NCBI RefSeq assembly: GCF_006345805.1
Contig: NC_043016.1
Span: forward strand, 31,558,001-31,622,000
Direction: 5' to 3'
Length of the DNA stretch: 64,000 nucleotides
Source: Octopus sinensis
Taxonomy: Eukaryota
The notes below the pieces were generated by a model. That model worked only from the letters and a program-made list of their open reading frames with translations, was not told the origin of the DNA and searched no databases. The translations under genes were made by a program, and so were the position numbers. Numbering within the stretch: position 1 is the first letter of the stretch; the number at the start of each line of letters is the position of its first letter. Positions 17,601 through 40,770 of the stretch are shown in pieces.

Positions 17601-18046
17601 TAGGCGCAGGAGTGGCTGTGTGGTAAGTAGCTTGCTTACCAACCACATGGTTCCGGGTTCAGTCCCACTGCGTGGCATCTTGGGCAAGTGTCTTCTGCTA
17701 TAGCCTCGGGCCGACCAATGCCTTGTGAGTGGATTTGGCAGACGGAAACTGAAAGAAGCCTGTCGTATATATGTATATATATGTGTGTATGTCCAACCCG
17801 TGCTTGCATGGAAAACAGATGCTAAATGATGATGATGTGTGTGTGTTTGTGTCTGTGTTTGTCCCCCTAGCATTGCTTGACAACTGATGCTGGTGTGTTT
17901 AAGTCCCCATCACTTAGCGGTTCGGCAAAAGAGGCCGATAGAATAAGTACTGGGCTTACAAAGAATAAGTCCCGGGGTCGATTTGCTCGATTAAATGCGG
18001 TGCTCCAGCATGGCCGCAGTCAAATGACTGAAACAAGTAAAAGAGT
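17601..18046 (+). mobile_element. Near full-length family-A SINE with a nested family-C fragment (~17795-17835)
   Basis: tRNA-like head gtggctgtgtggtaag...ggttccgggttcagtccc; tail caaatgactgaaacaagtaaaagag. Confidence 0.88.
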
Positions 18047-18735: not shown

Positions 18736-19817
18736 CTTATGGGACAATGTTTTAAACAATCAAATGATTATCAAATGTTTCAAATAATCAAATGATAATG
18801 ATGAATGTTATTAATTTGTGTTTCATTAGGAGAAAAATATATAGTGAAATGACTGAATCCTACTGTCTATGATACTTCTTTTACTGGACCCAGAAGACTG
18901 AAAAGCAAGGTCAACAACTTTAGTGGGATCAAGATTATTTGACTTCCTAGAAAAAGTATTGAATTTTCTTCAAACCACATCTATTTTGTGAAAAAAAAAA
19001 ATGAACACACAGGATCAAAAAAACAAAAAGACAAGGTGAAACGAGGCACTAATCCATGTAATACTAACGGCGAAACTGGCAACTGAAACAAACAGTAATG
19101 CAATCAAAAGGGCCATTAAGGATATGAAGTCAGAGAAAGCAATTGAACTACCAAGTTTAATTACTTAGATGCTGAGAAATGAATAGATATTTTTTGATCT
19201 GGAATCTGCTTCTTCAGGGCTGAATGACAGCTACGTAAAGCATGATGCCAGATTTATTGTTTTAGATATCTTCAGCAGATTAATATGTTGTATGTGATAA
19301 TAGTAGGAAATCAAAAACAGCTCAAGAGAAATTAAAATAAATTAATTCATGAAGTTTTCATTTACAGATGAGAAAATTAACTCTAAATTTTGAATAATTT
19401 TGTGAGAAAGCATTTATGAAATAAACACTCTCCTCACACAAGCTGCTGAGATTTTAAGGCCTTGTCCATTGTTTGTCTTTACACCTTGGTAATGTAATCC
19501 AAAATAAAAGTGGAAAAGGAATTCTTGCCGGAGTGACTGAAATTAAAAGTTTCATAACCATAGGAGGTCACCAGCTATACTCCCGCTTCAGAGTCAACGT
19601 CGTCATTTTAGCATCCACTTATCCATGCTTGAATGGGTCAGTTGGGGCTGATTTTCTAAAGCTAGAAGTCCTTTCTGTCGTCAACCCTTACTCATTTCCG
19701 AGCAGATTAATTTTCCCAAGGCCTGATGTGTTTTTTCATGGGAGACTGGAAGCACAAACCTTGGTTATATGACAGTGATACATGTTTACAACCATCATGT
19801 GATGGCAAGGCAAAGGT

Positions 19818-19915
19818 ACACACAAACACATCCACACACACACACACAACTGGCTTCTTCCAGTTTAATGTCAATTAAATCCACTCACACGGCTTTGGTT
19901 GGCCTGGGGCTATAG
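19818..19915 (-). mobile_element. Left half of a family-A tRNA-type SINE interrupted by the array block
   Basis: (CA)n then ...aaatccactcacacggctttggttggcctggggctatag; homologous to intact copies at 17601-18046 and 62721-63105. Confidence 0.8.
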
Positions 19916-20111
19916 ATGATGATTACAGGTACATTCACTGCCATCAATTCAACATGAAGAAAATTCACCATAGGGAATTTTTACTAACAAAATATATCTA
20001 TATTATCTCACCATTAATAGTTAAAATTGGATTCAATCCTAAATCTGATTTTTCCCTGTAAATTTGGATTTATTCCCTAATATTTATTATTATATATATA
20101 TATATAAAAAG

Positions 20112-23100
20112 GCGGTGAACTGATGACAGTGCATTTCGCCAGTGATGAACTGATGACAGTGAACTTTCCCTATGGTGAATTAATGATGGTGGGCTTCATC
20201 TGTGATGAACTAATGACAGTGAACTTTCCCTATGGTGAATTAATGACGGTGGGCTTCATCTGTGATGAACTAATGACAGTGAACTTTCCCTATGGTGAAT
20301 TAATGACGGTGGGCTTCCTCTGTGATGAACTAATGACAGTGAACTTCCCTATGGTGAATTAATGACTGGTGGGCTTCCTCTGTGATGAACTAATGACAGT
20401 GAACTTTCCCTATGGTGAATTAATGATGGTGGGCTTCCTCTGTGATGAACTAATGACAGTGAACTTTCGCTATGGTGAATTAATGATGGTGGGCTTCCTC
20501 TGTGATGAACTAATGACAGTGAACTTTCCCTATGGTGAATTAATGACGGTGGGCTTCCTCTGTGATGAACTAATGACAGTGAACTTTCCCTATGGTGAAT
20601 TAATGACGGTGGGCTTCCTCTGTGATGAACTAATGACAGTGAACTTTCCCTATGGTGAATTAATGACGGTGGGCTTCCTCTGTGATGAACTAATGACAGT
20701 GAACTTTCCCTATGGTGAATTAATGACGGTGGGCTTCCTCTGTGATGAACTAATGACAGTGAACTTTCCCTATGGTGAATTAATGATGGTGGGCTTCCTC
20801 TGTGATGAACTAATGACAGTGAACTTTCGCTATGGTGAATTAATGATGGTGGGCTTCCTCTGTGATGAACTAATGACAGTGAACTTTCCCTATGGTGAAT
20901 TAATGATGGTGGGCTTCCTTGTGATGAACTAATGACAGTGAACTTTCCCTATGGTGAATTAATGATGGTGGGCTTCCTCTGTGATGAACTAATGACAGTG
21001 AACTTTCCCTATGGTGAATTAATGATGGTGGGCTTCATCTGTGATGAACTAATGACAGTGAACTTTCCTATGGTGAATTAATGATGGTGGGCTTCATCTG
21101 TGATGAACTAATGACAGTGAACTTTCCCTATGGTGAATTAATGATGGTGGGCTTCCTCTGTGATGAACTAATGACAGTGAACTTTCCCTATGGTGAATTA
21201 ATGATGGTGGCTTCATCTGTGATGAACTAATGACAGTGAACTTTCCCTATGGTGATTAATGATGGTGGGCTTCCTCTGTGATGAACTAATGACAGTGAAC
21301 TTTCCCTATGGTGATTAATGACTGGTGGGCTTCATCTGTGATGAACTAATGACAGTGAACTTTCCTATGGTGAATTAATGATGGTGGGCTTCCTCTGTGA
21401 TGAACTAATGACAGTGAACTTTCCCTATGGTGAATTAATGATGGTGGGCTTCATCTGTGATGAACTAATGACAGTGAACTTCCCTATGGTGAATTAATGA
21501 TGGTGGGCTTCATCTGTGATGAACTAATGACAGTGAACTTTCCCTATGGTGAATTAATGATGGTGGGCTTCCTCTGTGATGAACTAATGACAGTGAACTT
21601 TCCCTATGGTGAATTAATGATGGTGGGCTTCATCTGTGATGAACTAATGACAGTGAACTTTCCCTATGGTGAATTAATGATGGTGGGCTTCCTCTGTGAT
21701 GAACTAATGACAGTGAACTTTCCTATGGTGAATTAATGATGGTGGGCTTCCTCTGTGATGAACTAATGACAGTGAACTTTCCCTATGGTGAATTAATGAT
21801 GGTGGGCTTCTCTGTGATGAACTAATGACAGTGAACTTTCCCTATGGTGAATTAATGATGGTGGGCTTCATCTGTGATGAACTAATGACAGTGAACTTTC
21901 CCTATGGTGAATTAATGATGGTGGGCTTCCTCTGTGATGAACTAATGACAGTGAACTTTCCCTATGGTGAATTAATGACGGTGGGCTTCATCTGTGATGA
22001 ACTAATGACAGTGAACTTTCCCTATGGTGAATTAATGATGGTGGGCTTCCATCTGTGATGAACTAATGACAGTGAACTTTCGCTATGGTGAATTAATGAT
22101 GGTGGGCTTCCTCTGTGATGAACTAATGACAGTGAACTTTCCTATGGTGAATTAATGATGGTGGGCTTCTCTGTGATGAACTAATGACAGTGAACTTTCC
22201 CTATGGTGAATTAATGATGGTGGGCTTCATCTGTGATGAACTAATGACAGTGAACTTTCCTATGGTGAATTAATGATGGTGGGCTTCCTCTGTGATGAAC
22301 TAATGACAGTGAACTTTCCCTATGGTGAATTAATGATGGTGGGCTTCCTCTGTGATGAACTAATGACAGTGAACTTTCGCTATGGTGAATTAATGATGGT
22401 GGGCTTCATCTGTGATGAACTAATGACAGTGAACTTTCGCTATGGTGAATTAATGATGGTGGGCTTCCTCTGTGATGAACTAATGACAGTGAACTTTCCC
22501 TATGGTGAATTAATGATGGTGGGCTTCCTCTGTGATGAACTAATGACAGTGAACTTTCGCTATGGTGAATTAATGATGGTGGGCTTCATCTGTGATGAAC
22601 TAATGACAGTGAACTTTCGCTATGGTGAATTAATGATGGTGGGCTTCCTCTGTGATGAACTAATGACAGTGAACTTTCCTATGGTGAATTAATGATGGTG
22701 GGCTTCATCTGTGATGAACTAATGACAGTGAACTTTCCCTATGGTGAATTAATGATGGTGGGCTTCCTCTGTGATGAACTAATGACAGTGAACTTTCCTA
22801 TGGTGAATTAATGATGGTGGGCTTCCTCTGTGATGAACTAATGACAGTGAACTTTCCTATGGTGAATTAATGATGGTGGGCTTCCTCTGTGATGAACTAA
22901 TGACAGTGAACTTTCCCTATGGTGAATTAATGATGGTGGGCTTCCTCTGTGATGAACTAATGACAGTGAACTTTCCCTATGGTGAATTAATGATGGTGGG
23001 CTTCCTCTGTGATGAACTAATGACAGTGAACTTTCCCTATGGTGAATTAATGATGGTGGGCTTCCTCTGTGATGAACTAATGACAGTGAACTTTCCCTAT

Positions 23101-26100
23101 GGTGAATTAATGATGGTGGGCTTCCTCTGTGATGAACTAATGACAGTGAACTTTCCTATGGTGAATTAATGATGGTGGGCTTCCTCTGTGATGAACTAAT
23201 GACAGTGAACTTTCCTATGGTGAATTAATGATGGTGGGCTTCCTCTGTGATGAACTAATGACAGTGAACTTTCCCTATGGTGAATTAATGATGGTGGGCT
23301 TCCTCTGTGATGAACTAATGACAGTGAACTTTCCCTATGGTGAATTAATGATGGTGGGCTTCCTCTGTGATGAACTAATGACAGTGAACTTTCCCTATGG
23401 TGAATTAATGATGGTGGGCTTCCTCTGTGATGAACTAATGACAGTGAACTTTCCCTATGGTGAATTAATGATGGTGGGCTTCATCTGTGATGAACTAATG
23501 ACAGTGAACTTTCCCTATGGTGAATTAATGATGGTGGGCTTCCTCTGTGATGAACTAATGACAGTGAACTTTCCCTATGGTGAATTAATGATGGTGGGCT
23601 TCCTCTGTGATGAACTAATGACAGTGAACTTTCCCTATGGTGAATTAATGATGGTGGGCTTCCTCTGTGATGAACTAATGACAGTGAACTTTCCCTATGG
23701 TGAATTAATGATGGTGGGCTTCCTCTGTGATGAACTAATGACAGTGAACTTTCCCTATGGTGAATTAATGATGGTGGGCTTCCTCTGTGATGAACTAATG
23801 ACAGTGAACTTTCCCTATGGTGAATTAATGATGGTGGGCTTCATCTGTGATGAACTAATGACAGTGAACTTTCCCTATGGTGAATTAATGATGGTGGGCT
23901 TCATCTGTGATGAACTAATGACAGTGAACTTTCCCTATGGTGAATTAATGATGGTGGGCTTCCTCTGTGATGAACTAATGACAGTGAACTTTCCCTATGG
24001 TGAATTAATGATGGTGGGCTTCATCTGTGATGAACTAATGACAGTGAACTTTCCCTATGGTGAATTAATGATGGTGGGCTTCCTCTGTGATGAACTAATG
24101 ACAGTGAACTTTCCCTATGGTGAATTAATGATGGTGGGCTTCCTCTGTGATGAACTAATGACAGTGAACTTTCCCTATGGTGAATTAATGATGGTGGGCT
24201 TCATCTGTGATGAACTAATGACAGTGAACTTTCCCTATGGTGAATTAATGATGGTGGGCTTCATCTGTGATGAACTAATGACAGTGAACTTTCCCTATGG
24301 TGAATTAATGACGGTGGGCTTCCTCTGTGATGAACTAATGACAGTGAACTTTCCCTATGGTGAATTAATGATGGTGGGCTTCCTCTGTGATGAACTAATG
24401 ACAGTGAACTTTCCCTATGGTGAATTAATGATGGTGGGCTTCCTCTGTGATGAACTAATGACAGTGAACTTTCCCTATGGTGAATTAATGATGGTGGGCT
24501 TCCTCTGTGATGAACTAATGACAGTGAACTTTCCTATGGTGAATTAATGATGGTGGGCTTCCTCTGTGATGAACTAATGACAGTGAACTTTCCCTATGGT
24601 GAATTAATGATGGTGGGCTTCATCTGTGATGAACTAATGACAGTGAACTTTCCCTATGGTGAATTAATGATGGTGGGCTTCCTCTGTGATGAACTAATGA
24701 CAGTGAACTTTCCCTATGGTGAATTAATGATGGTGGGCTTCCTCTGTGATGAACTAATGACAGTGAACTTTCCCTATGGTGAATTAATGATGGTGGGCTT
24801 CCTCTGTGATGAACTAATGACAGTGAACTTTCCCTATGGTGAATTAATGATGGTGGGCTTCCTCTGTGATGAACTAATGACAGTGAACTTTCCCTATGGT
24901 GAATTAATGATGGTGGGCTTCCTCTGTGATGAACTAATGACAGTGAACTTTCCCTATGGTGAATTAATGATGGTGGGCTTCCTCTGTGATGAACTAATGA
25001 CAGTGAACTTTCCCTATGGTGAATTAATGATGGTGGGCTTCCTCTGTGATGAACTAATGACAGTGAACTTTCCCTATGGTGAATTAATGATGGTGGGCTT
25101 CCTCTGTGATGAACTAATGACAGTGAACTTTCCCTATGGTGAATTAATGATGGTGGGCTTCATCTGTGATGAACTAATGACAGTGAACTTTCCCTATGGT
25201 GAATTAATGATGGTGGGCTTCCTCTGTGATGAACTAATGACAGTGAACTTTCCCTATGGTGAATTAATGATGGTGGGCTTCATCTGTGATGAACTAATGA
25301 CAGTGAACTTTCCCTATGGTGAATTAATGATGGTGGGCTTCCTCTGTGATGAACTAATGACAGTGAACTTTCCCTATGGTGAATTAATGATGGTGGGCTT
25401 CCTCTGTGATGAACTAATGACAGTGAACTTTCCCTATGGTGAATTAATGATGGTGGGCTTCCTCTGTGATGAACTAATGACAGTGAACTTTCCCTATGGT
25501 GAATTAATGATGGTGGGCTTCATCTGTGATGAACTAATGACAGTGAACTTTCCCTATGGTGAATTAATGATGGTGGGCTTCATCTGTGATGAACTAATGA
25601 CAGTGAACTTTCCCTATGGTGAATTAATGATGGTGGGCTTCATCTGTGATGAACTAATGACAGTGAACTTTCCCTATGGTGAATTAATGATGGTGGGCTT
25701 CATCTGTGATGAACTAATGACAGTGAACTTTCCCTATGGTGAATTAATGATGGTGGGCTTCCTCTGTGATGAACTAATGACAGTGAACTTTCCCTATGGT
25801 GAATTAATGATGGTGGGCTTCATCTGTGATGAACTAATGACAGTGAACTTTCCCTATGGTGAATTAATGATGGTGGGCTTCATCTGTGATGAACTAATGA
25901 CAGTGAACTTTCCCTATGGTGAATTAATGATGGTGGGCTTCATCTGTGATGAACTAATGACAGTGAACTTTCCCTATGGTGAATTAATGATGGTGGGCTT
26001 CATCTGTGATGAACTAATGACAGTGAACTTTCCCTATGGTGAATTAATGATGGTGGGCTTCATCTGTGATGAACTAATGACAGTGAACTTTCCCTATGGT

Positions 26101-29100
26101 GAATTAATGATGGTGGGCTTCATCTGTGATGAACTAATGACAGTGAACTTTCCCTATGGTGAATTAATGATGGTGGGCTTCATCTGTGATGAACTAATGA
26201 CAGTGAACTTTCCCTATGGTGAATTAATGATGGTGGGCTTCCTCTGTGATGAACTAATGACAGTGAACTTTCCCTATGGTGAATTAATGATGGTGGGCTT
26301 CATCTGTGATGAACTAATGACAGTGAACTTTCCCTATGGTGAATTAATGATGGTGGGCTTCCTCTGTGATGAACTAATGACAGTGAACTTTCCCTATGGT
26401 GAATTAATGATGGTGGGCTTCATCTGTGATGAACTAATGACAGTGAACTTTCCCTATGGTGAATTAATGATGGTGGGCTTCATCTGTGATGAACTAATGA
26501 CAGTGAACTTTCCCTATGGTGAATTAATGATGGTGGGCTTCCTCTGTGATGAACTAATGACAGTGAACTTTCCTATGGTGAATTAATGATGGTGGGCTTC
26601 CTCTGTGATGAACTAATGACAGTGAACTTTCCTATGGTGAATTAATGATGGTGGGCTTCCTCTGTGATGAACTAATGACAGTGAACTTTCCCTATGGTGA
26701 ATTAATGATGGTGGGCTTCCTCTGTGATGAACTAATGACAGTGAACTTTCCCTATGGTGAATTAATGATGGTGGGCTTCCTCTGTGATGAACTAATGACA
26801 GTGAACTTTCCCTATGGTGAATTAATGATGGTGGGCTTCCTCTGTGATGAACTAATGACAGTGAACTTTCCCTATGGTGAATTAATGATGGTGGGCTTCC
26901 TCTGTGATGAACTAATGACAGTGAACTTTCCCTATGGTGAATTAATGATGGTGGGCTTCCTCTGTGATGAACTAATGACAGTGAACTTTCCCTATGGTGA
27001 ATTAATGATGGTGGGCTTCATCTGTGATGAACTAATGACAGTGAACTTTCCCTATGGTGAATTAATGATGGTGGGCTTCATCTGTGATGAACTAATGACA
27101 GTGAACTTTCCCTATGGTGAATTAATGATGGTGGGCTTCATCTGTGATGAACTAATGACAGTGAACTTTCCCTATGGTGAATTAATGATGGTGGGCTTCA
27201 TCTGTGATGAACTAATGACAGTGAACTTTCCCTATGGTGAATTAATGATGGTGGGCTTCATCTGTGATGAACTAATGACAGTGAACTTTCCCTATGGTGA
27301 ATTAATGATGGTGGGCTTCCTCTGTGATGAACTAATGACAGTGAACTTTCCCTATGGTGAATTAATGATGGTGGGCTTCCTCTGTGATGAACTAATGACA
27401 GTGAACTTTCCCTATGGTGAATTAATGATGGTGGGCTTCATCTGTGATGAACTAATGACAGTGAACTTTCCCTATGGTGAATTAATGATGGTGGGCTTCA
27501 TCTGTGATGAACTAATGACAGTGAACTTTCCCTATGGTGAATTAATGATGGTGGGCTTCATCTGTGATGAACTAATGACAGTGAACTTTCCCTATGGTGA
27601 ATTAATGATGGTGGGCTTCATCTGTGATGAACTAATGACAGTGAACTTTCCCTATGGTGAATTAATGATGGTGGGCTTCATCTGTGATGAACTAATGACA
27701 GTGAACTTTCGCTATGGTGAATTAATGATGGTGGGCTTCATCTGTGATGAACTAATGACAGTGAACTTTCCCTATGGTGAATTAATGATGGTGGGCTTCC
27801 TCTGTGATGAACTAATGACAGTGAACTTTCCCTATGGTGAATTAATGATGGTGGGCTTCCTCTGTGATGAACTAATGACAGTGAACTTTCGCTATGGTGA
27901 ATTAATGATGGTGGGCTTCCTCTGTGATGAACTAATGACAGTGAACTTTCCCTATGGTGAATTAATGATGGTGGGCTTCATCTGTGATGAACTAATGACA
28001 GTGAACTTTCCCTATGGTGAATTAATGATGGTGGGCTTCCTCTGTGATGAACTAATGACAGTGAACTTTCCTATGGTGAATTAATGATGGTGGGCTTCCT
28101 CTGTGATGAACTAATGACAGTGAACTTTCCCTATGGTGAATTAATGATGGTGGGCTTCCTCTGTGATGAACTAATGACAGTGAACTTTCCCTATGGTGAA
28201 TTAATGATGGTGGGCTTCCTCTGTGATGAACTAATGACAGTGAACTTTCCCTATGGTGAATTAATGATGGTGGGCTTCATCTGTGATGAACTAATGACAG
28301 TGAACTTTCCCTATGGTGAATTAATGATGGTGGGCTTCATCTGTGATGAACTAATGACAGTGAACTTTCCCTATGGTGAATTAATGATGGTGGGCTTCAT
28401 CTGTGATGAACTAATGACAGTGAACTTTCCTATGGTGAATTAATGATGGTGGGCTTCATCTGTGATGAACTAATGACAGTGAACTTTCCTATGGTGAATT
28501 AATGATGGTGGGCTTCATCTGTGATGAACTAATGACAGTGAACTTTCCCTATGGTGAATTAATGATGGTGGGCTTCATCTGTGATGAACTAATGACAGTG
28601 AACTTTCCCTATGGTGAATTAATGATGGTGGGCTTCCTCTGTGATGAACTAATGACAGTGAACTTTCCCTATGGTGAATTAATGATGGTGGGCTTCATCT
28701 GTGATGAACTAATGACAGTGAACTTTCCCTATGGTGAATTAATGATGGTGGGCTTCCTCTGTGATGAACTAATGACAGTGAACTTTCCTATGGTGAATTA
28801 ATGATGGTGGGCTTCATCTGTGATGAACTAATGACAGTGAACTTTCCTATGGTGAATTAATGATGGTGGGCTTCATCTGTGATGAACTAATGACAGTGAA
28901 CTTTCCTATGGTGAATTAATGATGGTGGGCTTCATCTGTGATGAACTAATGACAGTGAACTTTCCCTATGGTGAATTAATGATGGTGGGCTTCATCTGTG
29001 ATGAACTAATGACAGTGAACTTTCCCTATGGTGAATTAATGATGGTGGGCTTCCTCTGTGATGAACTAATGACAGTGAACTTTCCCTATGGTGAATTAAT

Positions 29101-32100
29101 GATGGTGGGCTTCCTCTGTGATGAACTAATGACAGTGAACTTTCCTATGGTGAATTAATGATGGTGGGCTTCATCTGTGATGAACTAATGACAGTGAACT
29201 TTCCCTATGGTGAATTAATGATGGTGGGCTTCATCTGTGATGAACTAATGACAGTGAACTTTCGCTATGGTGAATTAATGATGGTGGGCTTCCTCTGTGA
29301 TGAACTAATGACAGTGAACTTTCCCTATGGTGAATTAATGATGGTGGGCTTCATCTGTGATGAACTAATGACAGTGAACTTTCCCTATGGTGAATTAATG
29401 ATGGTGGGCTTCATCTGTGATGAACTAATGACAGTGAACTTTCCCTATGGTGAATTAATGATGGTGGGCTTCCTCTGTGATGAACTAATGACAGTGAACT
29501 TTCCCTATGGTGAATTAATGATGGTGGGCTTCATCTGTGATGAACTAATGACAGTGAACTTTCCCTATGGTGAATTAATGATGGTGGGCTTCATCTGTGA
29601 TGAACTAATGACAGTGAACTTTCCCTATGGTGAATTAATGATGGTGGGCTTCATCTGTGATGAACTAATGACAGTGAACTTTCCCTATGGTGAATTAATG
29701 ATGGTGGGCTTCATCTGTGATGAACTAATGACAGTGAACTTTCCCTATGGTGAATTAATGATGGTGGGCTTCATCTGTGATGAACTAATGACAGTGAACT
29801 TTCCCTATGGTGAATTAATGATGGTGGGCTTCATCTGTGATGAACTAATGACAGTGAACTTTCCCTATGGTGAATTAATGATGGTGGGCTTCATCTGTGA
29901 TGAACTAATGACAGTGAACTTTCCCTATGGTGAATTAATGATGGTGGGCTTCATCTGTGATGAACTAATGACAGTGAACTTTCCCTATGGTGAATTAATG
30001 ATGGTGGGCTTCATCTGTGATGAACTAATGACAGTGAACTTTCCCTATGGTGAATTAATGATGGTGGGCTTCCTCTGTGATGAACTAATGACAGTGAACT
30101 TTCCCTATGGTGAATTAATGATGGTGGGCTTCATCTGTGATGAACTAATGACAGTGAACTTTCCCTATGGTGAATTAATGATGGTGGGCTTCATCTGTGA
30201 TGAACTAATGACAGTGAACTTTCCCTATGGTGAATTAATGATGGTGGGCTTCATCTGTGATGAACTAATGACAGTGAACTTTCCCTATGGTGAATTAATG
30301 ATGGTGGGCTTCCTCTGTGATGAACTAATGACAGTGAACTTTCCCTATGGTGAATTAATGATGGTGGGCTTCATCTGTGATGAACTAATGACAGTGAACT
30401 TTCGCTATGGTGAATTAATGATGGTGGGCTTCATCTGTGATGAACTAATGACAGTGAACTTTCCCTATGGTGAATTAATGATGGTGGGCTTCCTCTGTGA
30501 TGAACTAATGACAGTGAACTTTCCCTATGGTGAATTAATGATGGTGGGCTTCATCTGTGATGAACTAATGACAGTGAACTTTCCCTATGGTGAATTAATG
30601 ATGGTGGGCTTCATCTGTGATGAACTAATGACAGTGAACTTTCCCTATGGTGAATTAATGATGGTGGGCTTCATCTGTGATGAACTAATGACAGTGAACT
30701 TTCCCTATGGTGAATTAATGATGGTGGGCTTCATCTGTGATGAACTAATGACAGTGAACTTTCCCTATGGTGAATTAATGATGGTGGGCTTCATCTGTGA
30801 TGAACTAATGACAGTGAACTTTCCCTATGGTGAATTAATGATGGTGGGCTTCATCTGTGATGAACTAATGACAGTGAACTTTCCCTATGGTGAATTAATG
30901 ATGGTGGGCTTCATCTGTGATGAACTAATGACAGTGAACTTTCCCTATGGTGAATTAATGATGGTGGGCTTCATCTGTGATGAACTAATGACAGTGAACT
31001 TTCCCTATGGTGAATTAATGATGGTGGGCTTCATCTGTGATGAACTAATGACAGTGAACTTTCCCTATGGTGAATTAATGATGGTGGGCTTCATCTGTGA
31101 TGAACTAATGACAGTGAACTTTCCCTATGGTGAATTAATGATGGTGGGCTTCATCTGTGATGAACTAATGACAGTGAACTTTCCCTATGGTGAATTAATG
31201 ATGGTGGGCTTCATCTGTGATGAACTAATGACAGTGAACTTTCCCTATGGTGAATTAATGATGGTGGGCTTCATCTGTGATGAACTAATGACAGTGAACT
31301 TTCCCTATGGTGAATTAATGATGGTGGGCTTCATCTGTGATGAACTAATGACAGTGAACTTTCCCTATGGTGAATTAATGATGGTGGGCTTCATCTGTGA
31401 TGAACTAATGACAGTGAACTTTCCCTATGGTGAATTAATGATGGTGGGCTTCATCTGTGATGAACTAATGACAGTGAACTTTCCCTATGGTGAATTAATG
31501 ATGGTGGGCTTCCTCTGTGATGAACTAATGACAGTGAACTTTCCCTATGGTGAATTAATGATGGTGGGCTTCATCTGTGATGAACTAATGACAGTGAACT
31601 TTCCCTATGGTGAATTAATGATGGTGGGCTTCATCTGTGATGAACTAATGACAGTGAACTTTCCCTATGGTGAATTAATGATGGTGGGCTTCATCTGTGA
31701 TGAACTAATGACAGTGAACTTTCCCTATGGTGAATTAATGATGGTGGGCTTCCTCTGTGATGAACTAATGACAGTGAACTTTCCCTATGGTGAATTAATG
31801 ATGGTGGGCTTCATCTGTGATGAACTAATGACAGTGAACTTTCCCTATGGTGAATTAATGATGGTGGGCTTCATCTGTGATGAACTAATGACAGTGAACT
31901 TTCCCTATGGTGAATTAATGATGGTGGGCTTCATCTGTGATGAACTAATGACAGTGAACTTTCCCTATGGTGAATTAATGATGGTGGGCTTCATCTGTGA
32001 TGAACTAATGACAGTGAACTTTCCCTATGGTGAATTAATGATGGTGGGCTTCATCTGTGATGAACTAATGACAGTGAACTTTCCTATGGTGAATTAATGA

Positions 32101-35100
32101 TGGTGGGCTTCATCTGTGATGAACTAATGACAGTGAACTTTCCCTATGGTGAATTAATGATGGTGGGCTTCATCTGTGATGAACTAATGACAGTGAACTT
32201 TCCCTATGGTGAATTAATGATGGTGGGCTTCATCTGTGATGAACTAATGACAGTGAACTTTCCCTATGGTGAATTAATGATGGTGGGCTTCATCTGTGAT
32301 GAACTAATGACAGTGAACTTTCCCTATGGTGAATTAATGATGGTGGGCTTCCTCTGTGATGAACTAATGACAGTGAACTTTCCCTATGGTGAATTAATGA
32401 TGGTGGGCTTCATCTGTGATGAACTAATGACAGTGAACTTTCCCTATGGTGAATTAATGATGGTGGGCTTCATCTGTGATGAACTAATGACAGTGAACTT
32501 TCCCTATGGTGAATTAATGATGGTGGGCTTCATCTGTGATGAACTAATGACAGTGAACTTTCCCTATGGTGAATTAATGATGGTGGGCTTCATCTGTGAT
32601 GAACTAATGACAGTGAACTTTCCCTATGGTGAATTAATGATGGTGGGCTTCATCTGTGATGAACTAATGACAGTGAACTTTCCTATGGTGAATTAATGAT
32701 GGTGGGCTTCATCTGTGATGAACTAATGACAGTGAACTTTCCCTATGGTGAATTAATGATGGTGGGCTTCCTCTGTGATGAACTAATGACAGTGAACTTT
32801 CCTATGGTGAATTAATGATGGTGGGCTTCATCTGTGATGAACTAATGACAGTGAACTTTCCCTATGGTGAATTAATGATGGTGGGCTTCATCTGTGATGA
32901 ACTAATGACAGTGAACTTTCCCTATGGTGAATTAATGATGGTGGGCTTCATCTGTGATGAACTAATGACAGTGAACTTTCCCTATGGTGAATTAATGATG
33001 GTGGGCTTCATCTGTGATGAACTAATGACAGTGAACTTTCGCTATGGTGAATTAATGATGGTGGGCTTCATCTGTGATGAACTAATGACAGTGAACTTTC
33101 CCTATGGTGAATTAATGATGGTGGGCTTCATCTGTGATGAACTAATGACAGTGAACTTTCCCTATGGTGAATTAATGATGGTGGGCTTCATCTGTGATGA
33201 ACTAATGACAGTGAACTTTCCCTATGGTGAATTAATGATGGTGGGCTTCATCTGTGATGAACTAATGACAGTGAACTTTCCCTATGGTGAATTAATGATG
33301 GTGGGCTTCATCTGTGATGAACTAATGACAGTGAACTTTCCTATGGTGAATTAATGATGGTGGGCTTCATCTGTGATGAACTAATGACAGTGAACTTTCC
33401 CTATGGTGAATTAATGATGGTGGGCTTCCTCTGTGATGAACTAATGACAGTGAACTTTCCCTATGGTGAATTAATGATGGTGGGCTTCATCTGTGATGAA
33501 CTAATGACAGTGAACTTTCCCTATGGTGAATTAATGATGGTGGGCTTCATCTGTGATGAACTAATGACAGTGAACTTTCGCTATGGTGAATTAATGATGG
33601 TGGGCTTCATCTGTGATGAACTAATGACAGTGAACTTTCCCTATGGTGAATTAATGATGGTGGGCTTCCTCTGTGATGAACTAATGACAGTGAACTTTCC
33701 CTATGGTGAATTAATGATGGTGGGCTTCATCTGTGATGAACTAATGACAGTGAACTTTCCTATGGTGAATTAATGATGGTGGGCTTCATCTGTGATGAAC
33801 TAATGACAGTGAACTTTCCCTATGGTGAATTAATGATGGTGGGCTTCATCTGTGATGAACTAATGACAGTGAACTTTCCCTATGGTGAATTAATGATGGT
33901 GGGCTTCATCTGTGATGAACTAATGACAGTGAACTTTCCCTATGGTGAATTAATGATGGTGGGCTTCATCTGTGATGAACTAATGACAGTGAACTTTCGC
34001 TATGGTGAATTAATGATGGTGGGCTTCATCTGTGATGAACTAATGACAGTGAACTTTCCCTATGGTGAATTAATGATGGTGGGCTTCATCTGTGATGAAC
34101 TAATGACAGTGAACTTTCCCTATGGTGAATTAATGATGGTGGGCTTCATCTGTGATGAACTAATGACAGTGAACTTTCCTATGGTGAATTAATGATGGTG
34201 GGCTTCATCTGTGATGAACTAATGACAGTGAACTTTCCCTATGGTGAATTAATGATGGTGGGCTTCCTCTGTGATGAACTAATGACAGTGAACTTTCCCT
34301 ATGGTGAATTAATGATGGTGGGCTTCATCTGTGATGAACTAATGACAGTGAACTTTCCCTATGGTGAATTAATGATGGTGGGCTTCATCTGTGATGAACT
34401 AATGACAGTGAACTTTCGCTATGGTGAATTAATGATGGTGGGCTTCATCTGTGATGAACTAATGACAGTGAACTTTCCCTATGGTGAATTAATGATGGTG
34501 GGCTTCATCTGTGATGAACTAATGACAGTGAACTTTCCCTATGGTGAATTAATGACGGTGGGCTTCATCTGTGATAAACTAATGACAGTGAACTTTCGCT
34601 ATGGTGAATTAATGATGGTGGGCTTCATCTGTGATGAACTAATGACAGTGAACTTTCCCTATGGTGAATTAATGACGGTGGGCTTCCTCTGTGATGAACT
34701 AATGACAGTGAACTTTCGCTATGGTGAATTAATGATGGTGGGCTTCATCTGTGATGAACTAATGACAGTGAACTTTCCCTATGGTGAATTAATGATGGTG
34801 GGCTTCATCTGTGATGAACTAATGACAGTGAACTTTCCTTATGGTGAATTAATGATGGTGGGCTTCATCTGTGATGAACTAATGACAGTGAACTTTCGCT
34901 ATGGTGAATTAATGATGGTGGGCTTCATCTGTGATGAACTAATGACAGTGAACTTTCGCTATGGTGAATTAATGATGGTGGGCTTCATCTGTGATGAACT
35001 AATGACAGTGAACTTTCCCTATGGTGAATTAATGATGGTGGGCTTCATCTGTGATGAACTAATGACAGTGAACTTTCCCTATGGTGAATTAATGATGGTG

Positions 35101-38100
35101 GGCTTCATCTGTGATGAACTAATGACAGTGAACTTTCCCTATGGTGAATTAATGATGGTGGGCTTCATCTGTGATGAACTAATGACAGTGAACTTTCCCT
35201 ATGGTGAATTAATGATGGTGGGCTTCCTCTGTGATGAACTAATGACAGTGAACTTTCCTATGGTGAATTAATGATGGTGGGCTTCATCTGTGATGAACTA
35301 ATGACAGTGAACTTTCCCTATGGTGAATTAATGATGGTGGGCTTCATCTGTGATGAACTAATGACAGTGAACTTTCCCTATGGTGAATTAATGATGGTGG
35401 GCTTCATCTGTGATGAACTAATGACAGTGAACTTTCCCTATGGTGAATTAATGATGGTGGGCTTCCTCTGTGATGAACTAATGACAGTGAACTTTCCCTA
35501 TGGTGAATTAATGATGGTGGGCTTCATCTGTGATGAACTAATGACAGTGAACTTTCCTATGGTGAATTAATGATGGTGGGCTTCATCTGTGATGAACTAA
35601 TGACAGTGAACTTTCCCTATGGTGAATTAATGATGGTGGGCTTCCTCTGTGATGAACTAATGACAGTGAACTTTCGCTATGGTGAATTAATGATGGTGGG
35701 CTTCCTCTGTGATGAACTAATGACAGTGAACTTTCCTATGGTGAATTAATGATGGTGGGCTTCATCTGTGATGAACTAATGACAGTGAACTTTCCCTATG
35801 GTGAATTAATGATGGTGGGCTTCCTCTGTGATGAACTAATGACAGTGAACTTTCCCTATGGTGAATTAATGATGGTGGGCTTCATCTGTGATGAACTAAT
35901 GACAGTGAACTTTCCCTATGGTGAATTAATGATGGTGGGCTTCCTCTGTGATGAACTAATGACAGTGAACTTTCCCTATGGTGAATTAATGATGGTGGGC
36001 TTCATCTGTGATGAACTAATGACAGTGAACTTTCGCTATGGTGAATTAATGATGGTGGGCTTCATCTGTGATGAACTAATGACAGTGAACTTTCCCTATG
36101 GTGAATTAATGACGGTGGGCTTCCTCTGTGATGAACTAATGACAGTGAACTTTCCCTATGGTGAATTAATGATGGTGGGCTTCATCTGTGATGAACTAAT
36201 GACAGTGAACTTTCGCTATGGTGAATTAATGATGGTGGGCTTCCTCTGTGATGAACTAATGACAGTGAACTTTCCCTATGGTGAATTAATGATGGTGGGC
36301 TTCATCTGTGATGAACTAATGACAGTGAACTTTCGCTATGGTGAATTAATGATGGTGGGCTTCCTCTGTGATGAACTAATGACAGTGAACTTTCCCTATG
36401 GTGAATTAATGATGGTGGGCTTCATCTGTGATGAACTAATGACAGTGAACTTTCGCTATGGTGAATTAATGATGGTGGGCTTCCTCTGTGATGAACTAAT
36501 GACAGTGAACTTTCCCTATGGTGAATTAATGACGGTGGGCTTCATCTGTGATGAACTAATGACAGTGAACTTTCCCTATGGTGAATTAATGATGGTGGGC
36601 TTCATCTGTGATGAACTAATGACAGTGAACTTTCGCTATGGTGAATTAATGATGGTGGGCTTCATCTGTGATGAACTAATGACAGTGAACTTTCCCTATG
36701 GTGAATTAATGATGGTGGGCTTCCTCTGTGATGAACTAATGACAGTGAACTTTCCCTATGGTGAATTAATGATGGTGGGCTTCATCTGTGATGAACTAAT
36801 GACAGTGAACTTTCGCTATGGTGAATTAATGATGGTGGGCTTCCTCTGTGATGAACTAATGACAGTGAACTTTCCCTATGGTGAATTAATGATGGTGGGC
36901 TTCATCTGTGATGAACTAATGACAGTGAACTTTCCCTATGGTGAATTAATGATGGTGGGCTTCATCTGTGATGAACTAATGACAGTGAACTTTCGCTATG
37001 GTGAATTAATGATGGTGGGCTTCCTCTGTGATGAACTAATGACAGTGAACTTTCCCTATGGTGAATTAATGATGGTGGGCTTCATCTGTGATGAACTAAT
37101 GACAGTGAACTTTCCCTATGGTGAATTAATGACGGTGGGCTTCATCTGTGATGAACTAATGACAGTGAACTTTCCCTATGGTGAATTAATGATGGTGGGC
37201 TTCATCTGTGATGAACTAATGACAGTGAACTTTCCCTATGGTGAATTAATGATGGTGGGCTTCCTCTGTGATGAACTAATGACAGTGAACTTTCCCTATG
37301 GTGAATTAATGATGGTGGGCTTCCTCTGTGATGAACTAATGACAGTGAACTTTCCCTATGGTGAATTAATGACGGTGGGCTTCATCTGTGATGAACTAAT
37401 GACAGTGAACTTTCCCTATGGTGAATTAATGACGGTGGGCTTCCTCTGTGATGAACTAATGACAGTGAACTTTCCCTATGGTGAATTAATGATGGTGGGC
37501 TTCATCTGTGATGAACTAATGACAGTGAACTTTCCCTATGGTGAATTAATGATGGTGGGCTTCATCTGTGATGAACTAATGACAGTGAACTTTCCCTATG
37601 GTGAATTAATGATGGTGGGCTTCCTCTGTGATGAACTAATGACAGTGAACTTTCCCTATGGTGAATTAATGATGGTGGGCTTCCTCTGTGATGAACTAAT
37701 GACAGTGAACTTTCCCTATGGTGAATTAATGATGGTGGGCTTCATCTGTGATGAACTAATGACAGTGAACTTTCCCTATGGTGAATTAATGATGGTGGGC
37801 TTCTCTGTGATGAACTAATGACAGTGAACTTTCCCTATGGTGAATTAATGATGGTGGGCTTCATCTGTGATGAACTAATGACAGTGAACTTTCCCTATGG
37901 TGAATTAATGATGGTGGGCTTCCTCTGTGATGAACTAATGACAGTGAACTTTCCCTATGGTGAATTAATGATGGTGGGCTTCATCTGTGATGAACTAATG
38001 ACAGTGAACTTTCCCTATGGTGAATTAATGATGGTGGGCTTCCTCTGTGATGAACTAATGACAGTGAACTTTCCCTATGGTGAATTAATGATGGTGGGCT

Positions 38101-39945
38101 TCCTCTGTGATGAACTAATGACAGTGAACTTTCCCTATGGTGAATTAATGATGGTGGGCTTCATCTGTGATGAACTAATGACAGTGAACTTTCCCTATGG
38201 TGAATTAATGATGGTGGGCTTCCTCTGTGATGAACTAATGACAGTGAACTTCCCTATGGTGAATTAATGATGGTGGGCTTCCTCTGTGATGAACTAATGA
38301 CAGTAAACTTTCCCTATGGTGAATTAATGACGGTGGGCTTCATCTGTGATGAACTAATGACAGTGAACTTTCGCTATGGTGAATTAATGATGGTGGGCTT
38401 CCTCTGTGATGAACTAATGACAGTGAACTTTCCCTATGGTGAATTAATGACGGTGGGCTTCATCTGTGATGAACTAATGACAGTGAACTTTCGCTATGGT
38501 GAATTAATGATGGTGGGCTTCCTCTGTGATGAACTAATGACAGTGAACTTTCCCTATGGTGAATTAATGATGGTGGGCTTCATCTGTGATGAACTAATGA
38601 CAGTGAACTTTCGCTATGGTGAATTAATGATGGTGGGCTTCCTCTGTGATGAACTAATGACAGTGAACTTTCCCTATGGTGAATTAATGATGGTGGGCTT
38701 CATCTGTGATGAACTAATGACAGTGAACTTTCGCTATGGTGAATTAATGATGGTGGGCTTCCTCTGTGATGAACTAATGACAGTGAACTTTCCCTATGGT
38801 GAATTAATGATGGTGGGCTTCATCTGTGATGAACTAATGACAGTGAACTTTCCCTATGGTGAATGAATGATGGTGGGCTTCATCTGTGATGAACTAATGA
38901 CAGTGAACTTTCGCTATGGTGAATTAATGATGGTGGGCTTCATCTGTGATGAACTAATGACAGTGAACTTTCCCTATGGTGAATTAATGATGGTGGGCTT
39001 CATCTGTGATGAACTAATGACAGTGAACTTTCGCTATGGTGAATTAATGATGGTGGGCTTCCTCTGTGATGAACTAATGACAGTGAACTTTCCCTATGGT
39101 GAATTAATGATGGTGGGCTTCATCTGTGATGAACTAATGACAGTGAACTTTCCCTATGGTGAATTAATGATGGTGGGCTTCATCTGTGATGAACTAATGA
39201 CAGTGAACTTTCCCTATGGTGAATTAATGATGGTGGGCTTCCTCTGTGATGAACTAATGACAGTGAACTTTCCCTATGGTGAATTAATGATGGTGGGCTT
39301 CATCTGTGATGAACTAATGACAGTGAACTTTCCCTATGGTGAATTAATGACGGTGGGCTTCCTCTGTGTTGAACTAATGACAGTGAACTTTCCCTATGGT
39401 GAATTAATGATGGTGGGCTTCCTCTGTGATGAACTAATGACAGTGAACTTTCGCTATGGTGAATTAATGATGGTGGGCTTCCTCTGTGATGAACTAATGA
39501 CAGTGAACTTTCCTATGGTGAATTAATGATGGTGGGCTTCCTCTGTGATGAACTAATGACAGTGAACTTTCCCTATGGTGAATTAATGATGGTGGGCTTC
39601 ATCTGTGATGAACTAATGACAGTGAACTTTCCCTATGGTGAATTAATGATGGTGGGCTTCCTCTGTGATGAACTAATGACAGTGAACTTTCCCTATGGTG
39701 AATTAATGATGGTGGGCTTCATCTGTGATGAACTGATGACGGTGGATTTCCCTTGTGGTGAACTGATGACGGTGGACTTCCTCTGTAGTGAATTGATGAC
39801 GGTGGACTTCCCCTGTAGTGAATTGATGACAGTGGACTTCCCCTGTGGTGAATTGCTGACAGTGGACTTCCCCTGTGGTGAATTGCTGACAGTGAACTTT
39901 CCCTGCAGTGAATCAAAGATGGTGAACTTTCTCTACAGTGAACTT
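20112..39945. repeat. ~19.8 kb tandem array, ~330 x 60-bp unit (diverged dimer of 30-bp monomers)
   Basis: Unit ATGGTGGGCTTC(A/C)TCTGTGATGAACTAATG-ACAGTGAACTTTC(C/G)CTATGGTGAATTAATG repeated almost perfectly. Diverged 30-bp monomers at both edges; about 30 59-bp variants. Confidence 0.98.
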
Positions 39946-39956
39946 ACCAGACACGG

Positions 39957-40043
39957 TAGAAGACACATGCCAAAGGTACTACACAGTGAAACTGAAATCA
40001 AGACCACATGGTTGAGAAGTAAGCTTCTTAACCACACAGCCAT
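39957..40043 (-). mobile_element. Right half (head end) of the same family-A SINE
   Basis: tagaagacacatgccaaagg...cttcttaaccacacagcca continues the family sequence exactly where the left half stops. Confidence 0.8.
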
Positions 40044-40138
40044 ATCTGATTCTTTATCATAATCATGCTTGTTTGTATGCATTTTATAAACAAATGCATA
40101 TTACATAGAAAAAGTACATGTCAAAGAAAATTCTATTC

Positions 40139-40144
40139 TTTATT
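40139..40144 (-). promoter_or_regulatory. Candidate polyadenylation signal of VAMP7
   Basis: AATAAA on - strand ~210 nt after the stop and ~190 bp before the array. The hexamer is common in AT-rich DNA, so support is weak. Confidence 0.3.
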
Positions 40145-40353
40145 TTGCAGTAAATTTAGTGAAAAAGATTCAAAAATATATATATGTTATCTCAAGTAGA
40201 AATTAAATGAAATTAGAGACAGAGAGAAAGAGTAGGAAATACTTGTATTCTTATTTGAAAACGTCCATAGGGTAAATATATGGCTATTTGTGTCTGTGTT
40301 TCACAATAACTACAACAGGCTGTAAATGGTCATTTGGACTTTCATGTCCATAA

Positions 40354-40419
40354 TTAGTTCCTGGTGCATGGCCAATCAAGTCCACCACATGTAATCGATA
40401 TTATCAGGTACAAAACAAC
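40354..40419 (-). CDS. VAMP7: VAMP7 last coding exon (end of TM, luminal CGG..WP.C tail)
   Basis: Acceptor gtatttgcag|. Reads VVLYLIISITCGGLDWPCTRN*, similar to human IVSPLCGGFTWPSCVKK. Confidence 0.93.
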   Translation of the reverse strand, partial: VVLYLIISITCGGLDWPCTRN

Positions 40420-40770
40420 CTGCAAATACAAATAAATAAATCAGTAAAAAGAAGGACATTTCTCATTCATATTTTACAATAAGGATAAGAAACGTAAAAC
40501 AGTCACAAATACATTTCAGTTTTTATCTACATATCCACCTACACACACACACATATATATATAGATAAGATAAAACTCAGTTGGAAATGGATGCATGGCA
40601 TTCAATCATATAATAATATACATACATACATACACACACACACACATATCACTATGATTCTACCCTACTTATGCTGAATTTCCCTCCTCCTATCCTCTGC
40701 ATATGACAGTAAGTAGACAGCAGTGAACATTCAAACTAAATTCTTGATCAGTATATACATGCATAGAAAT

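What the first reader, a model, noticed from the sequence alone, without database searches (positions are those of the whole stretch)
19916..39956. The whole 20-kb array block is an insertion that splits one SINE cleanly
Seen: the left flank ends ...ggttggcctggggCTATAG (19915) and the right flank begins TAGAAGACACatgccaaagg (39957). Intact copies read GGCTATAG-TAGAAGACAC contiguously (reverse strand near 62805-62825; CAG variant near 17692-17710). Both halves are similarly diverged, roughly 20% by eye, and rejoin with no loss and no clear target duplication. Inference: a small repeat-bearing module entered an old SINE at one point and later expanded to 20 kb. This would be a dated birth site of a large satellite from a mobile cargo, of a type I cannot assign to a named family.
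Basis: partly seen in the sequence, partly recalled or inferred. Interest (0 to 1): 0.8.

Follow-up and report, generated by a model that had tools for sequence, protein, structure and literature searches.

The report
Foldback-type MITE grown into 20-kb array
A small inverted-repeat transposon (about 0.2-0.5 kb when it arrived) jumped into an old SINE, and much later one pair of its internal 30-bp repeats was amplified about 326 times into a 20-kb tandem array; this is a clean example of a known way in which satellite DNA is born.

Summary
The two flanks are complementary halves of one old SINE copy. They meet at a single base of intact copies and are similarly diverged (75% and 79% identity to a consensus of in-window copies).

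The "no target duplication, unassignable cargo" reading does not hold. The insert (19921-39955) carries the two termini of a dispersed MITE family: 5'-GATTACAGGTAAGTTCAC ... GTGAACTTACCAGACAYG-3'. At least 187 left and 124 right termini occur in this genome, against 0 in controls. Eight family copies were checked and all show 9-bp target-site duplications. In the window the duplication is degenerate (ATAGATGAT vs GTAGAAGAC, 6/9).

Family members are 150-420-bp hairpin-forming elements whose arms are built from 30-bp repeats. In the window copy, one adjacent, already diverged pair of 30-mers (67% identical) was amplified to about 326 nearly identical 60-bp units (1.6% mean difference). One unamplified 30-mer remains on the left and seven on the right. 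This 60-mer variant exists nowhere else in the assembly.

Other family copies grew 30-bp arrays independently (about 7.0 kb on C25, 4.6 kb on C14).

The closest known parallels are foldback elements (Tetris, FB, Tm1). No transposase partner was found, so a Mutator/Phantom assignment is inferred only.

Verdict: a new member of a known kind, of moderate interest.

The parts
19802..19911 (-). Tail-side half of an old SINE copy. The outer limit is uncertain; homology is detectable from 19802/19818.
   Evidence: aligns to intact in-window copies (for example 62913-62815) at 70-76%. It is 75.0% identical to the five-copy consensus over the 19800-19920 segment, which also includes the left duplication copy.
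19912..19920 (.). Left copy of the 9-bp target-site duplication, ATAGATGAT (degenerate).
   Evidence: Position fixed by the family terminus at 19921. Matches 39956-39964 at 6/9, p about 0.017.
19921..20020 (+). MITE left terminus (GATTACAGGTACATTCAC) and left arm. The arm holds about 2 inverted 30-mer-like repeats and the start of the unique middle segment.
   Evidence: many genomic copies at 81-85% identity; alignment A1, invariant from G at 19921; inverted repeats 19934-19985 versus array monomers at 20143-20181; 85.5% identity to the consensus of 7 copies.
20021..20106 (+). Nested 3'-terminal fragment (about 85 bp) of a different, young dispersed repeat that ends in (TA)n. It replaces about 12-18 bp of the MITE middle segment.
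   Evidence: 17 copies at 87-99% identity, mostly matching query positions 106-191. (most copies share a further upstream part that the window lacks).
20107..20141 (+). A-run and the first, unamplified 30-mer of the right arm (GCGGTGAACTGATGACAGTGCATTTCGCCA).
   Evidence: The MITE consensus has (A)n followed by CGGTGAATTGATGAC at this point.
20142..39729 (+). Amplified array: about 326 units of 60 bp. Each unit is a dimer of 30-mers A (GTGATGAACTAATGACAGTGAACTTTCCCT) and B (ATGGTGAATTAATGATGGTGGGCTTCATCT).
   Evidence: TRF. (326 units, 25 distinct, top two types 144 and 87 copies). (mean pairwise difference 1.6%, three polymorphic columns, A versus B 67% identical). (variant private to this locus, all in + orientation).
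39730..39955 (+). Seven unamplified, mutually diverged 30-mers and the MITE right terminus (...CAGTGAACTTACCAGACACG).
   Evidence: continuous 30-nt register from the array into the terminus. (right terminus shared by family copies; 124 genomic matches, 0 in control).
39956..39964 (.). Right copy of the 9-bp target-site duplication, GTAGAAGAC. It is identical to the SINE sequence at this point.
39965..40042 (-). Head-side half of the same SINE copy.
   Evidence: aligns to 62815-62730, 17696-17613, 44322-44405 and 4889-4807 at 76-80%. It is 78.9% identical to the consensus over the 39956-40060 segment, which also includes the right duplication copy.

Best explanation
The 20,035-bp insert (19921-39955) is one copy of a non-autonomous cut-and-paste DNA transposon (MITE) with foldback-like architecture. 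The two outermost motifs are asymmetric (GATTACA versus CRTGTCT). Next comes a shared GGTAAGTTCAC core, and then arms made of a variable number of 30-bp repeats that resemble the terminal motif.

Proposed history:
- The element integrated into an already resident SINE and made a 9-bp target-site duplication, as every other checked family copy does.
- It decayed in place to about 14.5% from the family consensus. Its internal 30-mers drifted apart.
- Recently, unequal exchange or replication slippage in a 60-bp register amplified one adjacent pair of right-arm 30-mers to about 326 copies.
- This left one progenitor 30-mer on the left of the array, seven on the right, and both termini intact.

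Shown: the termini, the family membership, the 9-bp duplications in the family, the bounded in-place array, the age contrast, the private nature of the variant, and independent arrays at other family copies.

Inferred: the amplification mechanism, that the 30-mers are transposase-binding sites, and that the family belongs to the Mutator (Foldback/Phantom) superfamily.
For: Termini and family. The 19916-20026 stretch matches many dispersed copies at 81-85%. Alignment A1 is invariant from GATTACAGG at 19921. The left-terminus 32-mer with up to 3 mismatches has 187 genomic matches against 0 for the reversed control. The right terminus has 124 against 0. Paired termini give element lengths mostly of 150-420 bp.

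Target duplications of 9 bp. L026 9/9; L019, L020, L027 and L029 8/9; L024 6/9. L075 8/9 and L074 7/9. Chance of 8/9 or better is 0.0003. The window gives 6/9 (p = 0.017).

Foldback structure. Left-arm segments are reverse complements of array monomers. A 197-nt copy folds as a hairpin at -25.5 kcal/mol, z = -3.6.

In-place amplification. The 30-nt register is continuous from the array into the unamplified 30-mers and the terminus. The A monomer is 90% and the B monomer 70% identical to a representative family-type 30-mer; A versus B is 67%. Units differ by 1.6%, whereas the MITE arm is 14.5% from its consensus.

Private variant. All 318 genome matches lie in this array.

Recurrence. The C14 array is 154 x 30 bp, bounded by both termini, and grew from the other arm. 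The C25 array is about 7.0 kb and starts at the right terminus. Smaller arrays lie on C6, C9, C18, C22, C23 and unplaced contigs.

Both junctions are real. The flanks are halves of one SINE, and the right flank is single-copy in the assembly.
Against: The window's own target duplication is only 6/9 and needs a 3-nt (TAG) indel relative to the SINE consensus. On its own it is weak, and the case rests on the family-level evidence.

No autonomous copy or transposase was found. At least 46 MULE-domain hits exist in the genome, but none lies near a listed terminus. One intact-looking MULE copy has no family terminus within 4.5 kb on either side. The two longest paired-termini elements (2.2 and 1.7 kb) are MITEs interrupted by SINE and (TA)n insertions.

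The superfamily is therefore inferred only from duplication length and architecture. The array length and the 59-nt units (36 of 325 spacings) may include long-read consensus or assembly error. No second haplotype, individual or species could be examined.
Confidence: 0.85

Rival explanations
1. An unclassifiable repeat-bearing cargo inserted without a target duplication, for example a Helitron/Helentron-type rolling-circle element. Such elements carry satellite-like arrays in molluscs and insert without duplicating the target.
For: By eye the SINE halves rejoin as CTATAG|TAGAAGAC with no obvious duplication. Helentron-borne satellite-like arrays are documented in oyster (PMC7492417, found). 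A weak sub-threshold Helitron_like_N hit appears on one array reading frame (21.6 bits against a cut-off of 28.9).
Against: All 8 other copies checked have 9-bp duplications directly outside those termini. The ends are inverted repeats sharing GGTAAGTTCAC, not the 5'-TC...CTRR-3' ends of Helitrons. Insertion sites are not A|T or T|T dinucleotides. The Helitron_like_N hit is below threshold and falls on a periodic pseudo-protein.
Confidence: 0.04
2. This is the assembly-artefact explanation. The 20-kb block, or one of its junctions, would be a mis-join, or a collapse or over-expansion of repeat reads, rather than a real contiguous locus.
For: The units are near-identical (98%), which makes assembly hard. 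There are 36 units of 59 nt, differing by one C in a C-run, a typical long-read consensus error. No read data were available.
Against: The window contains no Ns. A mis-join would not place the matching left and right termini of one MITE family, in the correct orientation, between the two halves of one SINE that abut at the same base. The array register runs continuously into the unamplified 30-mers at both ends. Variant unit types form local blocks, as expected of a real array.
Confidence: 0.07
3. This is the coding explanation. The array would be a protein-coding decapeptide-repeat gene or exon, since open frames of up to 990 aa read GELMMVGF[I/L]C-DELMTVNFPY.
For: There are long open frames on the + strand. 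The Pfam family 'Decapeptide' (PF25296) is hit above its cut-off: 95.6 and 106.6 bits.
Against: The Pfam family is the DotG/IcmE repeat of a bacterial secretion system. The alignment shares only F..EL once per 10 residues and has low posterior values, so it is a periodic coincidence summed over many repeats. No homologue was found among 5.8 billion proteins. In the related 30-bp arrays four of the six frames are open over hundreds of codons, which is simply a property of the monomer. The three common unit variants (C/G at column 26, T/C at 44, A/C at 55) change the residue in that frame, as the P/R, M/T and I/L alternations in the translated array show. The frame is broken at every 59-nt unit. 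The repeats are the arms of a MITE.
Confidence: 0.02

Closest known systems
Tetris foldback transposon of Drosophila virilis and its TIR-220 satellite (PMC4079207)
   Same: It is a non-autonomous element with inverted arms that contain internal tandem repeats resembling the terminal domain. Target-site duplications are 8-10 bp. No transposase-encoding copy was found. The arm repeats expanded into long satellite-like arrays.
   Different: The repeat unit there is 220/154 bp; here it is 30 bp, amplified as a 60-bp dimer. Tetris repeats became a multi-locus satellite; here the 60-bp variant is confined to one locus, while sister arrays with a 30-bp unit sit at other copies. The host phylum differs (this genome is probably a cephalopod, judged from the SINE type and genome size, which is my own knowledge). 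There is no sequence relationship.
Foldback (FB)/Phantom-type Mutator elements, for example Tm1 of root-knot nematodes (PMC3169594)
   Same: Composite inverted repeats have asymmetric outermost motifs, followed by a short shared motif and a variable number of short tandem repeats. Target-site duplications are 9 bp. MITE-like derivatives exist.
   Different: Tm1 repeats are 13-15 bp. Tm1 has a copy encoding a FLYWCH+MULE transposase, whereas none was found here. Tm1 is not reported to have grown 20-kb arrays.
Tandem-repeat-containing MITEs and Helentron-borne arrays of bivalve molluscs (DTC84, PMC3879986; oyster Cg170-type arrays, PMC7492417)
   Same: These are mollusc mobile elements that carry short internal arrays of satellite-like monomers. 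They are proposed as seeds and dispersal vehicles of satellite DNA (abstracts listed).
   Different: In those elements the repeats form a central core that is unrelated to the termini, and the oyster carriers are rolling-circle Helentrons. Here the repeats are the inverted arms themselves, and the element makes 9-bp duplications.

Membership tests
MITE (non-autonomous TIR DNA transposon) | Dispersed multi-copy family with conserved termini | tested here: met
   187 left and 124 right termini at up to 3 mismatches in 32 nt, 0 in reversed-pattern controls, spread over many chromosomes.
MITE (non-autonomous TIR DNA transposon) | Terminal inverted repeats | tested here: met
   Both ends share GGTAAGTTCAC(T/C)G in inverted orientation, with an asymmetric outermost 7 nt. 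The hairpin fold gives z = -3.6.
MITE (non-autonomous TIR DNA transposon) | Target-site duplication of fixed length | tested here: met
   9 bp in 8 of 8 other copies, at 6/9 to 9/9 identity. The window gives 6/9.
MITE (non-autonomous TIR DNA transposon) | Small size and no coding capacity | tested here: met
   Paired termini lie 149-418 bp apart in most copies. The longer ones are interrupted by SINE and (TA)n insertions and have no transposase ORF.
Foldback-like elements | Arms composed of a variable number of short tandem repeats related to the terminal motif | tested here: met
   Copies carry between 1 and 8 or more 30-mers per arm. Either arm can expand: the left arm on C14, the right arm in the window and on C25.
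Mutator superfamily (Foldback/Phantom subclass) | Target-site duplication of 8-10 bp, typically 9 bp | tested here: met
   9 bp. The expected range comes from PMC4079207 and PMC3169594.
Mutator superfamily (Foldback/Phantom subclass) | Autonomous partner encoding a MULE (plus FLYWCH) transposase between the same termini | tested here: inconclusive
   MULE-domain sequences exist in the genome (at least 46), but none lies near a listed terminus. One intact-looking copy lacks the termini within 4.5 kb on either side. Only about 100 of the termini were listed, and FLYWCH was not searched.
Helitron/Helentron | No target duplication, insertion at an A|T or T|T dinucleotide, 5'-TC...CTRR-3' ends with a 3' hairpin | tested here: not met
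   9-bp duplications are present, the ends are GATTACAGG...CAGACAYG, and the target sequences vary.
Satellite DNA (classical sense) | Long homogeneous tandem array | tested here: met
   About 326 x 60 bp, 98% matches.
Satellite DNA (classical sense) | The same repeat at many loci or chromosomes, or in heterochromatin | tested here: not met
   The 60-bp variant occurs only at this locus. Related arrays elsewhere are 70-80% identical and have a 30-bp period. Chromatin state cannot be tested with these tools.

The most novel reading that the evidence does not exclude
This may be a so far undescribed cephalopod foldback-type family. Its 30-bp arm repeats, presumably transposase-binding sites, have nucleated kb-scale arrays repeatedly and independently at different insertion sites: 4.6 kb from the left arm on C14, about 7 kb on C25 and 20 kb here, both from the right arm. 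The window locus preserves the whole record in one place: the target duplication, both termini, the unamplified progenitor monomers on both sides, and the dimer that seeded the expansion. That would give a natural series of satellite birth stages. Since the units differ by only 1.6%, the array is probably polymorphic in length among individuals.
Probability: 0.5. Interest if true: 0.45.

Novelty: new member of a known kind. Interest (0 to 1): 0.3.

Why it matters
Examples in which a satellite-like array can be traced to its progenitor copy, with the insertion site, both transposon ends and the unamplified founder monomers all still readable, are uncommon. They are useful for testing how tandem arrays start: which register is chosen, and whether exchange or slippage drives the growth.

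Here the order of events can be read directly from divergence:
- SINE halves, about 21-25% from their consensus.
- MITE arm, about 14.5% from its consensus.
- Nested young repeat fragment and 60-bp amplification, about 1-3%.

The finding also shows that the array's age is decoupled from the insertion's age. That matters for anyone who wants to date the birth of a satellite from its flanks.

For annotation, the case warns in two ways. A seemingly seamless SINE rejoin can hide a decayed target duplication. A non-coding 30/60-bp array can score above threshold against a Pfam repeat family by periodicity alone.

It does not change what is known about how transposons seed satellites.

Tried and rejected
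(1) Helitron/Helentron carrier. Rejected on termini and 9-bp duplications.

(2) Coding decapeptide repeat. Rejected.

(3) Search for an autonomous partner.
- A Pfam MULE search of the genome found no hit near a listed terminus.
- One MULE copy was fetched with 4.5-kb flanks and carried no family termini.
- The truncated copy L030 was extended by 4 kb and showed no right end and no family repeats.
- The two longest paired-termini elements were only MITEs with nested SINE and (TA)n insertions.

(4) Haplotig or empty allele within the assembly. The right flank 40050-40500 is single-copy, so there is no alternative allele to compare.

(5) tRNA-like head of the SINE. ARAGORN found no tRNA in the window, so the tRNA origin of the SINE was not shown here.

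A Longin-domain search gave 4 genomic hits, none on this chromosome. This was not pursued further.

(7) BLAST-type genome search with array units. It did not return the array itself because common words are skipped. An exact-pattern search was used instead.

(9) A literature search for octopus satellites or MITEs found nothing on this family.
Full report
**What is at the coordinates**

The window is G000:C20:31558001-31622000 of a 2.72-Gb assembly with 13,516 contigs. It lies about 1.4 Mb from the end of a 33-Mb chromosome-scale contig. From my own knowledge, the SINE type and the genome size point to an octopus; this was not tested.

Tandem Repeats Finder reports a single array at 20142-39884, with period 60, 329.7 copies and 98% matches. 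The block has a flat composition of about 40% GC and a GC skew of +0.2 to +0.28, which sets it apart sharply from both flanks. The window contains no Ns.

**Checking the observation**

The left flank ends with ...ggcctggggctatag at 19915. The right flank reads g-tagaagacac from 39956/39957.

When the flanks are searched separately, the left one stops at base 62815 of the intact copy and the right one starts at that same base.

Against a consensus of the five copies the halves are 75.0% and 78.9% identical.

**The insert is a copy of a MITE family**

The 226 nt between the SINE break and the array are not unique.
- Positions 19916-20026 match many dispersed copies at 81-85%.
- Positions 20021-20106 match a different, young repeat at 87-99%.

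Aligning the first group shows invariant sequence beginning exactly at GATTACAGG (19921), with unrelated sequence to its left in every copy. In the short copies the other end is ...GTGAACTTACCAGACA(T/C)G. The window has the same sequence at 39936-39955.

Exact-pattern searches count 187 left termini and 124 right termini in the genome at up to 3 mismatches in 32 nt. The reversed control patterns give none. Pairing the listed coordinates gives elements mostly 149-418 bp long.

**Target-site duplication**

Directly outside the two termini, 9-bp direct repeats are found in every copy examined:
- L026, 9/9.
- L019, L020, L027 and L029, 8/9.
- L024, 6/9, in an A-run.
- L075, 8/9, and L074, 7/9.

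Random 9-mer pairs from this window reach 8/9 or better with probability 0.0003, and 6/9 or better with probability 0.017.

In the window the corresponding 9-mers are ATAGATGAT (19912-19920) and GTAGAAGAC (39956-39964), a 6/9 match.

The seamless look arises because the SINE reads ...CTA-TAG-TAG-AAGAC... at this point. The left copy's CTATAG and the right copy's TAGAAGAC each match the SINE and appear contiguous.

Relative to the SINE consensus, the left duplication copy is 3 nt short, by one TAG. That slip happened either in the SINE before the insertion or in the left copy afterwards, and I cannot tell which. Taken alone, the window's duplication is weak evidence. The claim rests on the family.

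**Anatomy of the family**

The outermost 7 nt differ between the two ends (GATTACA versus the complement of ...AGACAYG). They are followed by a shared inverted core, GGTAAGTTCAC.

Inside the core, both arms consist of 30-bp repeats in inverted orientation, of the type GTGGTGAATTGATGACAGTGAACTTTCCCT. Each 30-mer contains GTGAAYT twice, 15 nt apart, which is the same motif as in the terminus. A roughly 55-bp unique middle segment separates the arms.

A 197-nt copy folds as a hairpin at -25.5 kcal/mol, z = -3.6. The number of 30-mers per arm ranges from 1 to 8 in short copies.

**How the array arose**

The array sits entirely within the right arm.
- To its left is one unamplified 30-mer (20112-20141).
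- To its right are seven mutually diverged 30-mers (39730-39939), followed by the terminus. The 30-nt register is unbroken throughout.

The 60-bp unit is a dimer of monomers A and B. A and B are only 67% identical to each other, and 90% and 70% identical to a representative family-type 30-mer that I assembled by eye from alignment A1 and copy L068.

The 326 units are nearly identical. Only 25 distinct sequences occur, and two types account for 231 units. The mean pairwise difference is 1.6%, with three polymorphic columns plus 59-nt units that lack one C of a C-run. Variant types occur in local blocks.

By contrast, the MITE's left arm is 14.5% from the consensus of seven copies, which are themselves 4.5-11% from that consensus.

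The order of events is therefore as follows:
1. SINE insertion.
2. MITE insertion.
3. Long decay, during which neighbouring 30-mers diverged.
4. Recent amplification of one neighbouring pair, in a 60-bp register.

I infer unequal sister-chromatid exchange or replication slippage as the mechanism. The local blocks of variants fit this, but it is not shown.

A roughly 85-bp 3' fragment of a young repeat ending in (TA)n is nested in the MITE's middle segment (20021-20106). It is likewise much younger than the MITE.

**Is it a satellite?**

A 42-nt probe across the unit junction, with up to 2 mismatches, has 318 matches in the whole genome. All 318 are in this array, all on the + strand, and the control gives none. 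The 60-bp variant is therefore private to this locus.

Related arrays exist elsewhere at 70-80% identity:
- C14:49246.8-49251.4 kb holds 154 copies of a 30-bp unit. It is bounded by both family termini and grew from the left arm.
- C25:11558990-11566010, about 7.0 kb, begins at the right terminus and lacks the other arm.
- Smaller runs lie on C6, C9, C18, C22, C23 and unplaced contigs.

Array growth from the arms is thus a recurrent property of the family. The window holds the largest example found.

**Rivals**

A Helitron/Helentron carrier is excluded by the termini and the 9-bp duplications.

A mis-join is very unlikely. It would have to place the matching ends of one MITE family, correctly oriented, between two SINE halves that abut at the same base. 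The copy number and the 59-nt units could nevertheless be assembly error, and no reads were available.

A coding reading was considered because the + strand is open for up to 990 codons and scores 95-107 bits against Pfam 'Decapeptide' PF25296. That family is the DotG/IcmE repeat. The alignment shares only F..EL every ten residues, with low posterior values. No homologue exists among 5.8 billion proteins. In the related 30-bp arrays four of the six frames are open over hundreds of codons, and the common unit variants all change the residue in that frame. It is a periodic coincidence.

**Classification**

The architecture matches foldback elements in three respects: asymmetric outer motifs, arms of short tandem repeats of variable number, and 9-bp duplications.

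The closest documented parallels are two.
- Tm1 of root-knot nematodes has the same end layout, 9-bp duplications and MITE-like derivatives, and a Phantom/Mutator transposase (PMC3169594).
- Tetris of Drosophila virilis has 8-10-bp duplications and no transposase copy found, and its arm repeats expanded into a satellite (PMC4079207).

I could not find a transposase-encoding copy. Membership of the Mutator superfamily is therefore an inference from duplication length and architecture. I put it at roughly 0.5.

Mollusc precedents for repeat-bearing mobile elements exist (DTC84, PMC3879986; oyster Helentrons, PMC7492417), but their design differs.

**Verdict**

The element is not unassignable, a decayed target duplication is present, and the insertion does not date the array.

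This is a well-preserved new member of a known kind, namely a satellite-like array born from the arm repeats of a foldback-type MITE. Interest is moderate (0.3). It would rise somewhat if the family proves undescribed and the arrays prove polymorphic, because the three arrays together with the many short copies form a natural series of stages.

Noticed in passing
window 20021-20106: A nested 3' fragment (about 85 bp, ending in (TA)n) of a different dispersed repeat lies here. It is 87-99% identical to 17 listed genomic copies. Most of those copies carry a further upstream part that the window lacks. It sits inside the MITE's middle segment and is far younger than the MITE.
   Followed up: partly
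window 20349-40062, + strand frame (for example 29125-32097): The array translates as a decapeptide repeat (GELMMVGF[I/L]C/DELMTVNFPY), with open frames of up to 990 aa. It scores above the Pfam cut-off for PF25296 'Decapeptide', the DotG/IcmE repeat. The match shares only F..EL per 10 residues and is a periodicity artefact, which could mislead automatic annotation.
   Followed up: yes
G000:C14:49246760-49251392 (L066 1461-6093) and G000:C25:11558990-11566010 (L073 3691 to L067 5711): Two further kb-scale arrays (4.6 kb and about 7.0 kb) of the same family's 30-bp repeat grew independently at other insertions. The C14 array grew from the opposite (left) arm. The C25 array already shows an alternating two-variant (60-bp) pattern at its start.
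   Followed up: partly
L074 (G000:C4:11707641-11709864) and L075 (G000:C13:8282699-8284439): In these family copies the common SINE, with long (TA)n tracts, has inserted into the MITE. This is the reverse nesting of the window, so SINE and MITE activity overlapped in time.
   Followed up: partly
window 45425-46273 (- strand): A 282-aa open frame carries a reverse-transcriptase domain (RVT_1, 47 bits). It is probably a non-LTR retrotransposon fragment and is unrelated to the finding.
   Followed up: partly
window 13648-14105 and 56450-692: Two short, diverged tandem duplications were found: 227 bp x 2 at 77% matches, and 66/132 bp x 3.7/1.8 at 73-77%. They were not examined further.
   Followed up: no
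window 53001-54000 and 2001-3000: These are local GC-skew peaks (+0.385 and +0.267). The first coincides with frames rich in H/T/I repeats, which suggests GGT/GAT-type low-complexity repeats. A similar tract lies beside the MITE copy in L019.
   Followed up: no
whole genome G000: A Longin-domain search (the N-terminal domain of VAMP7) found four matches, none on contig C20.
   Followed up: partly
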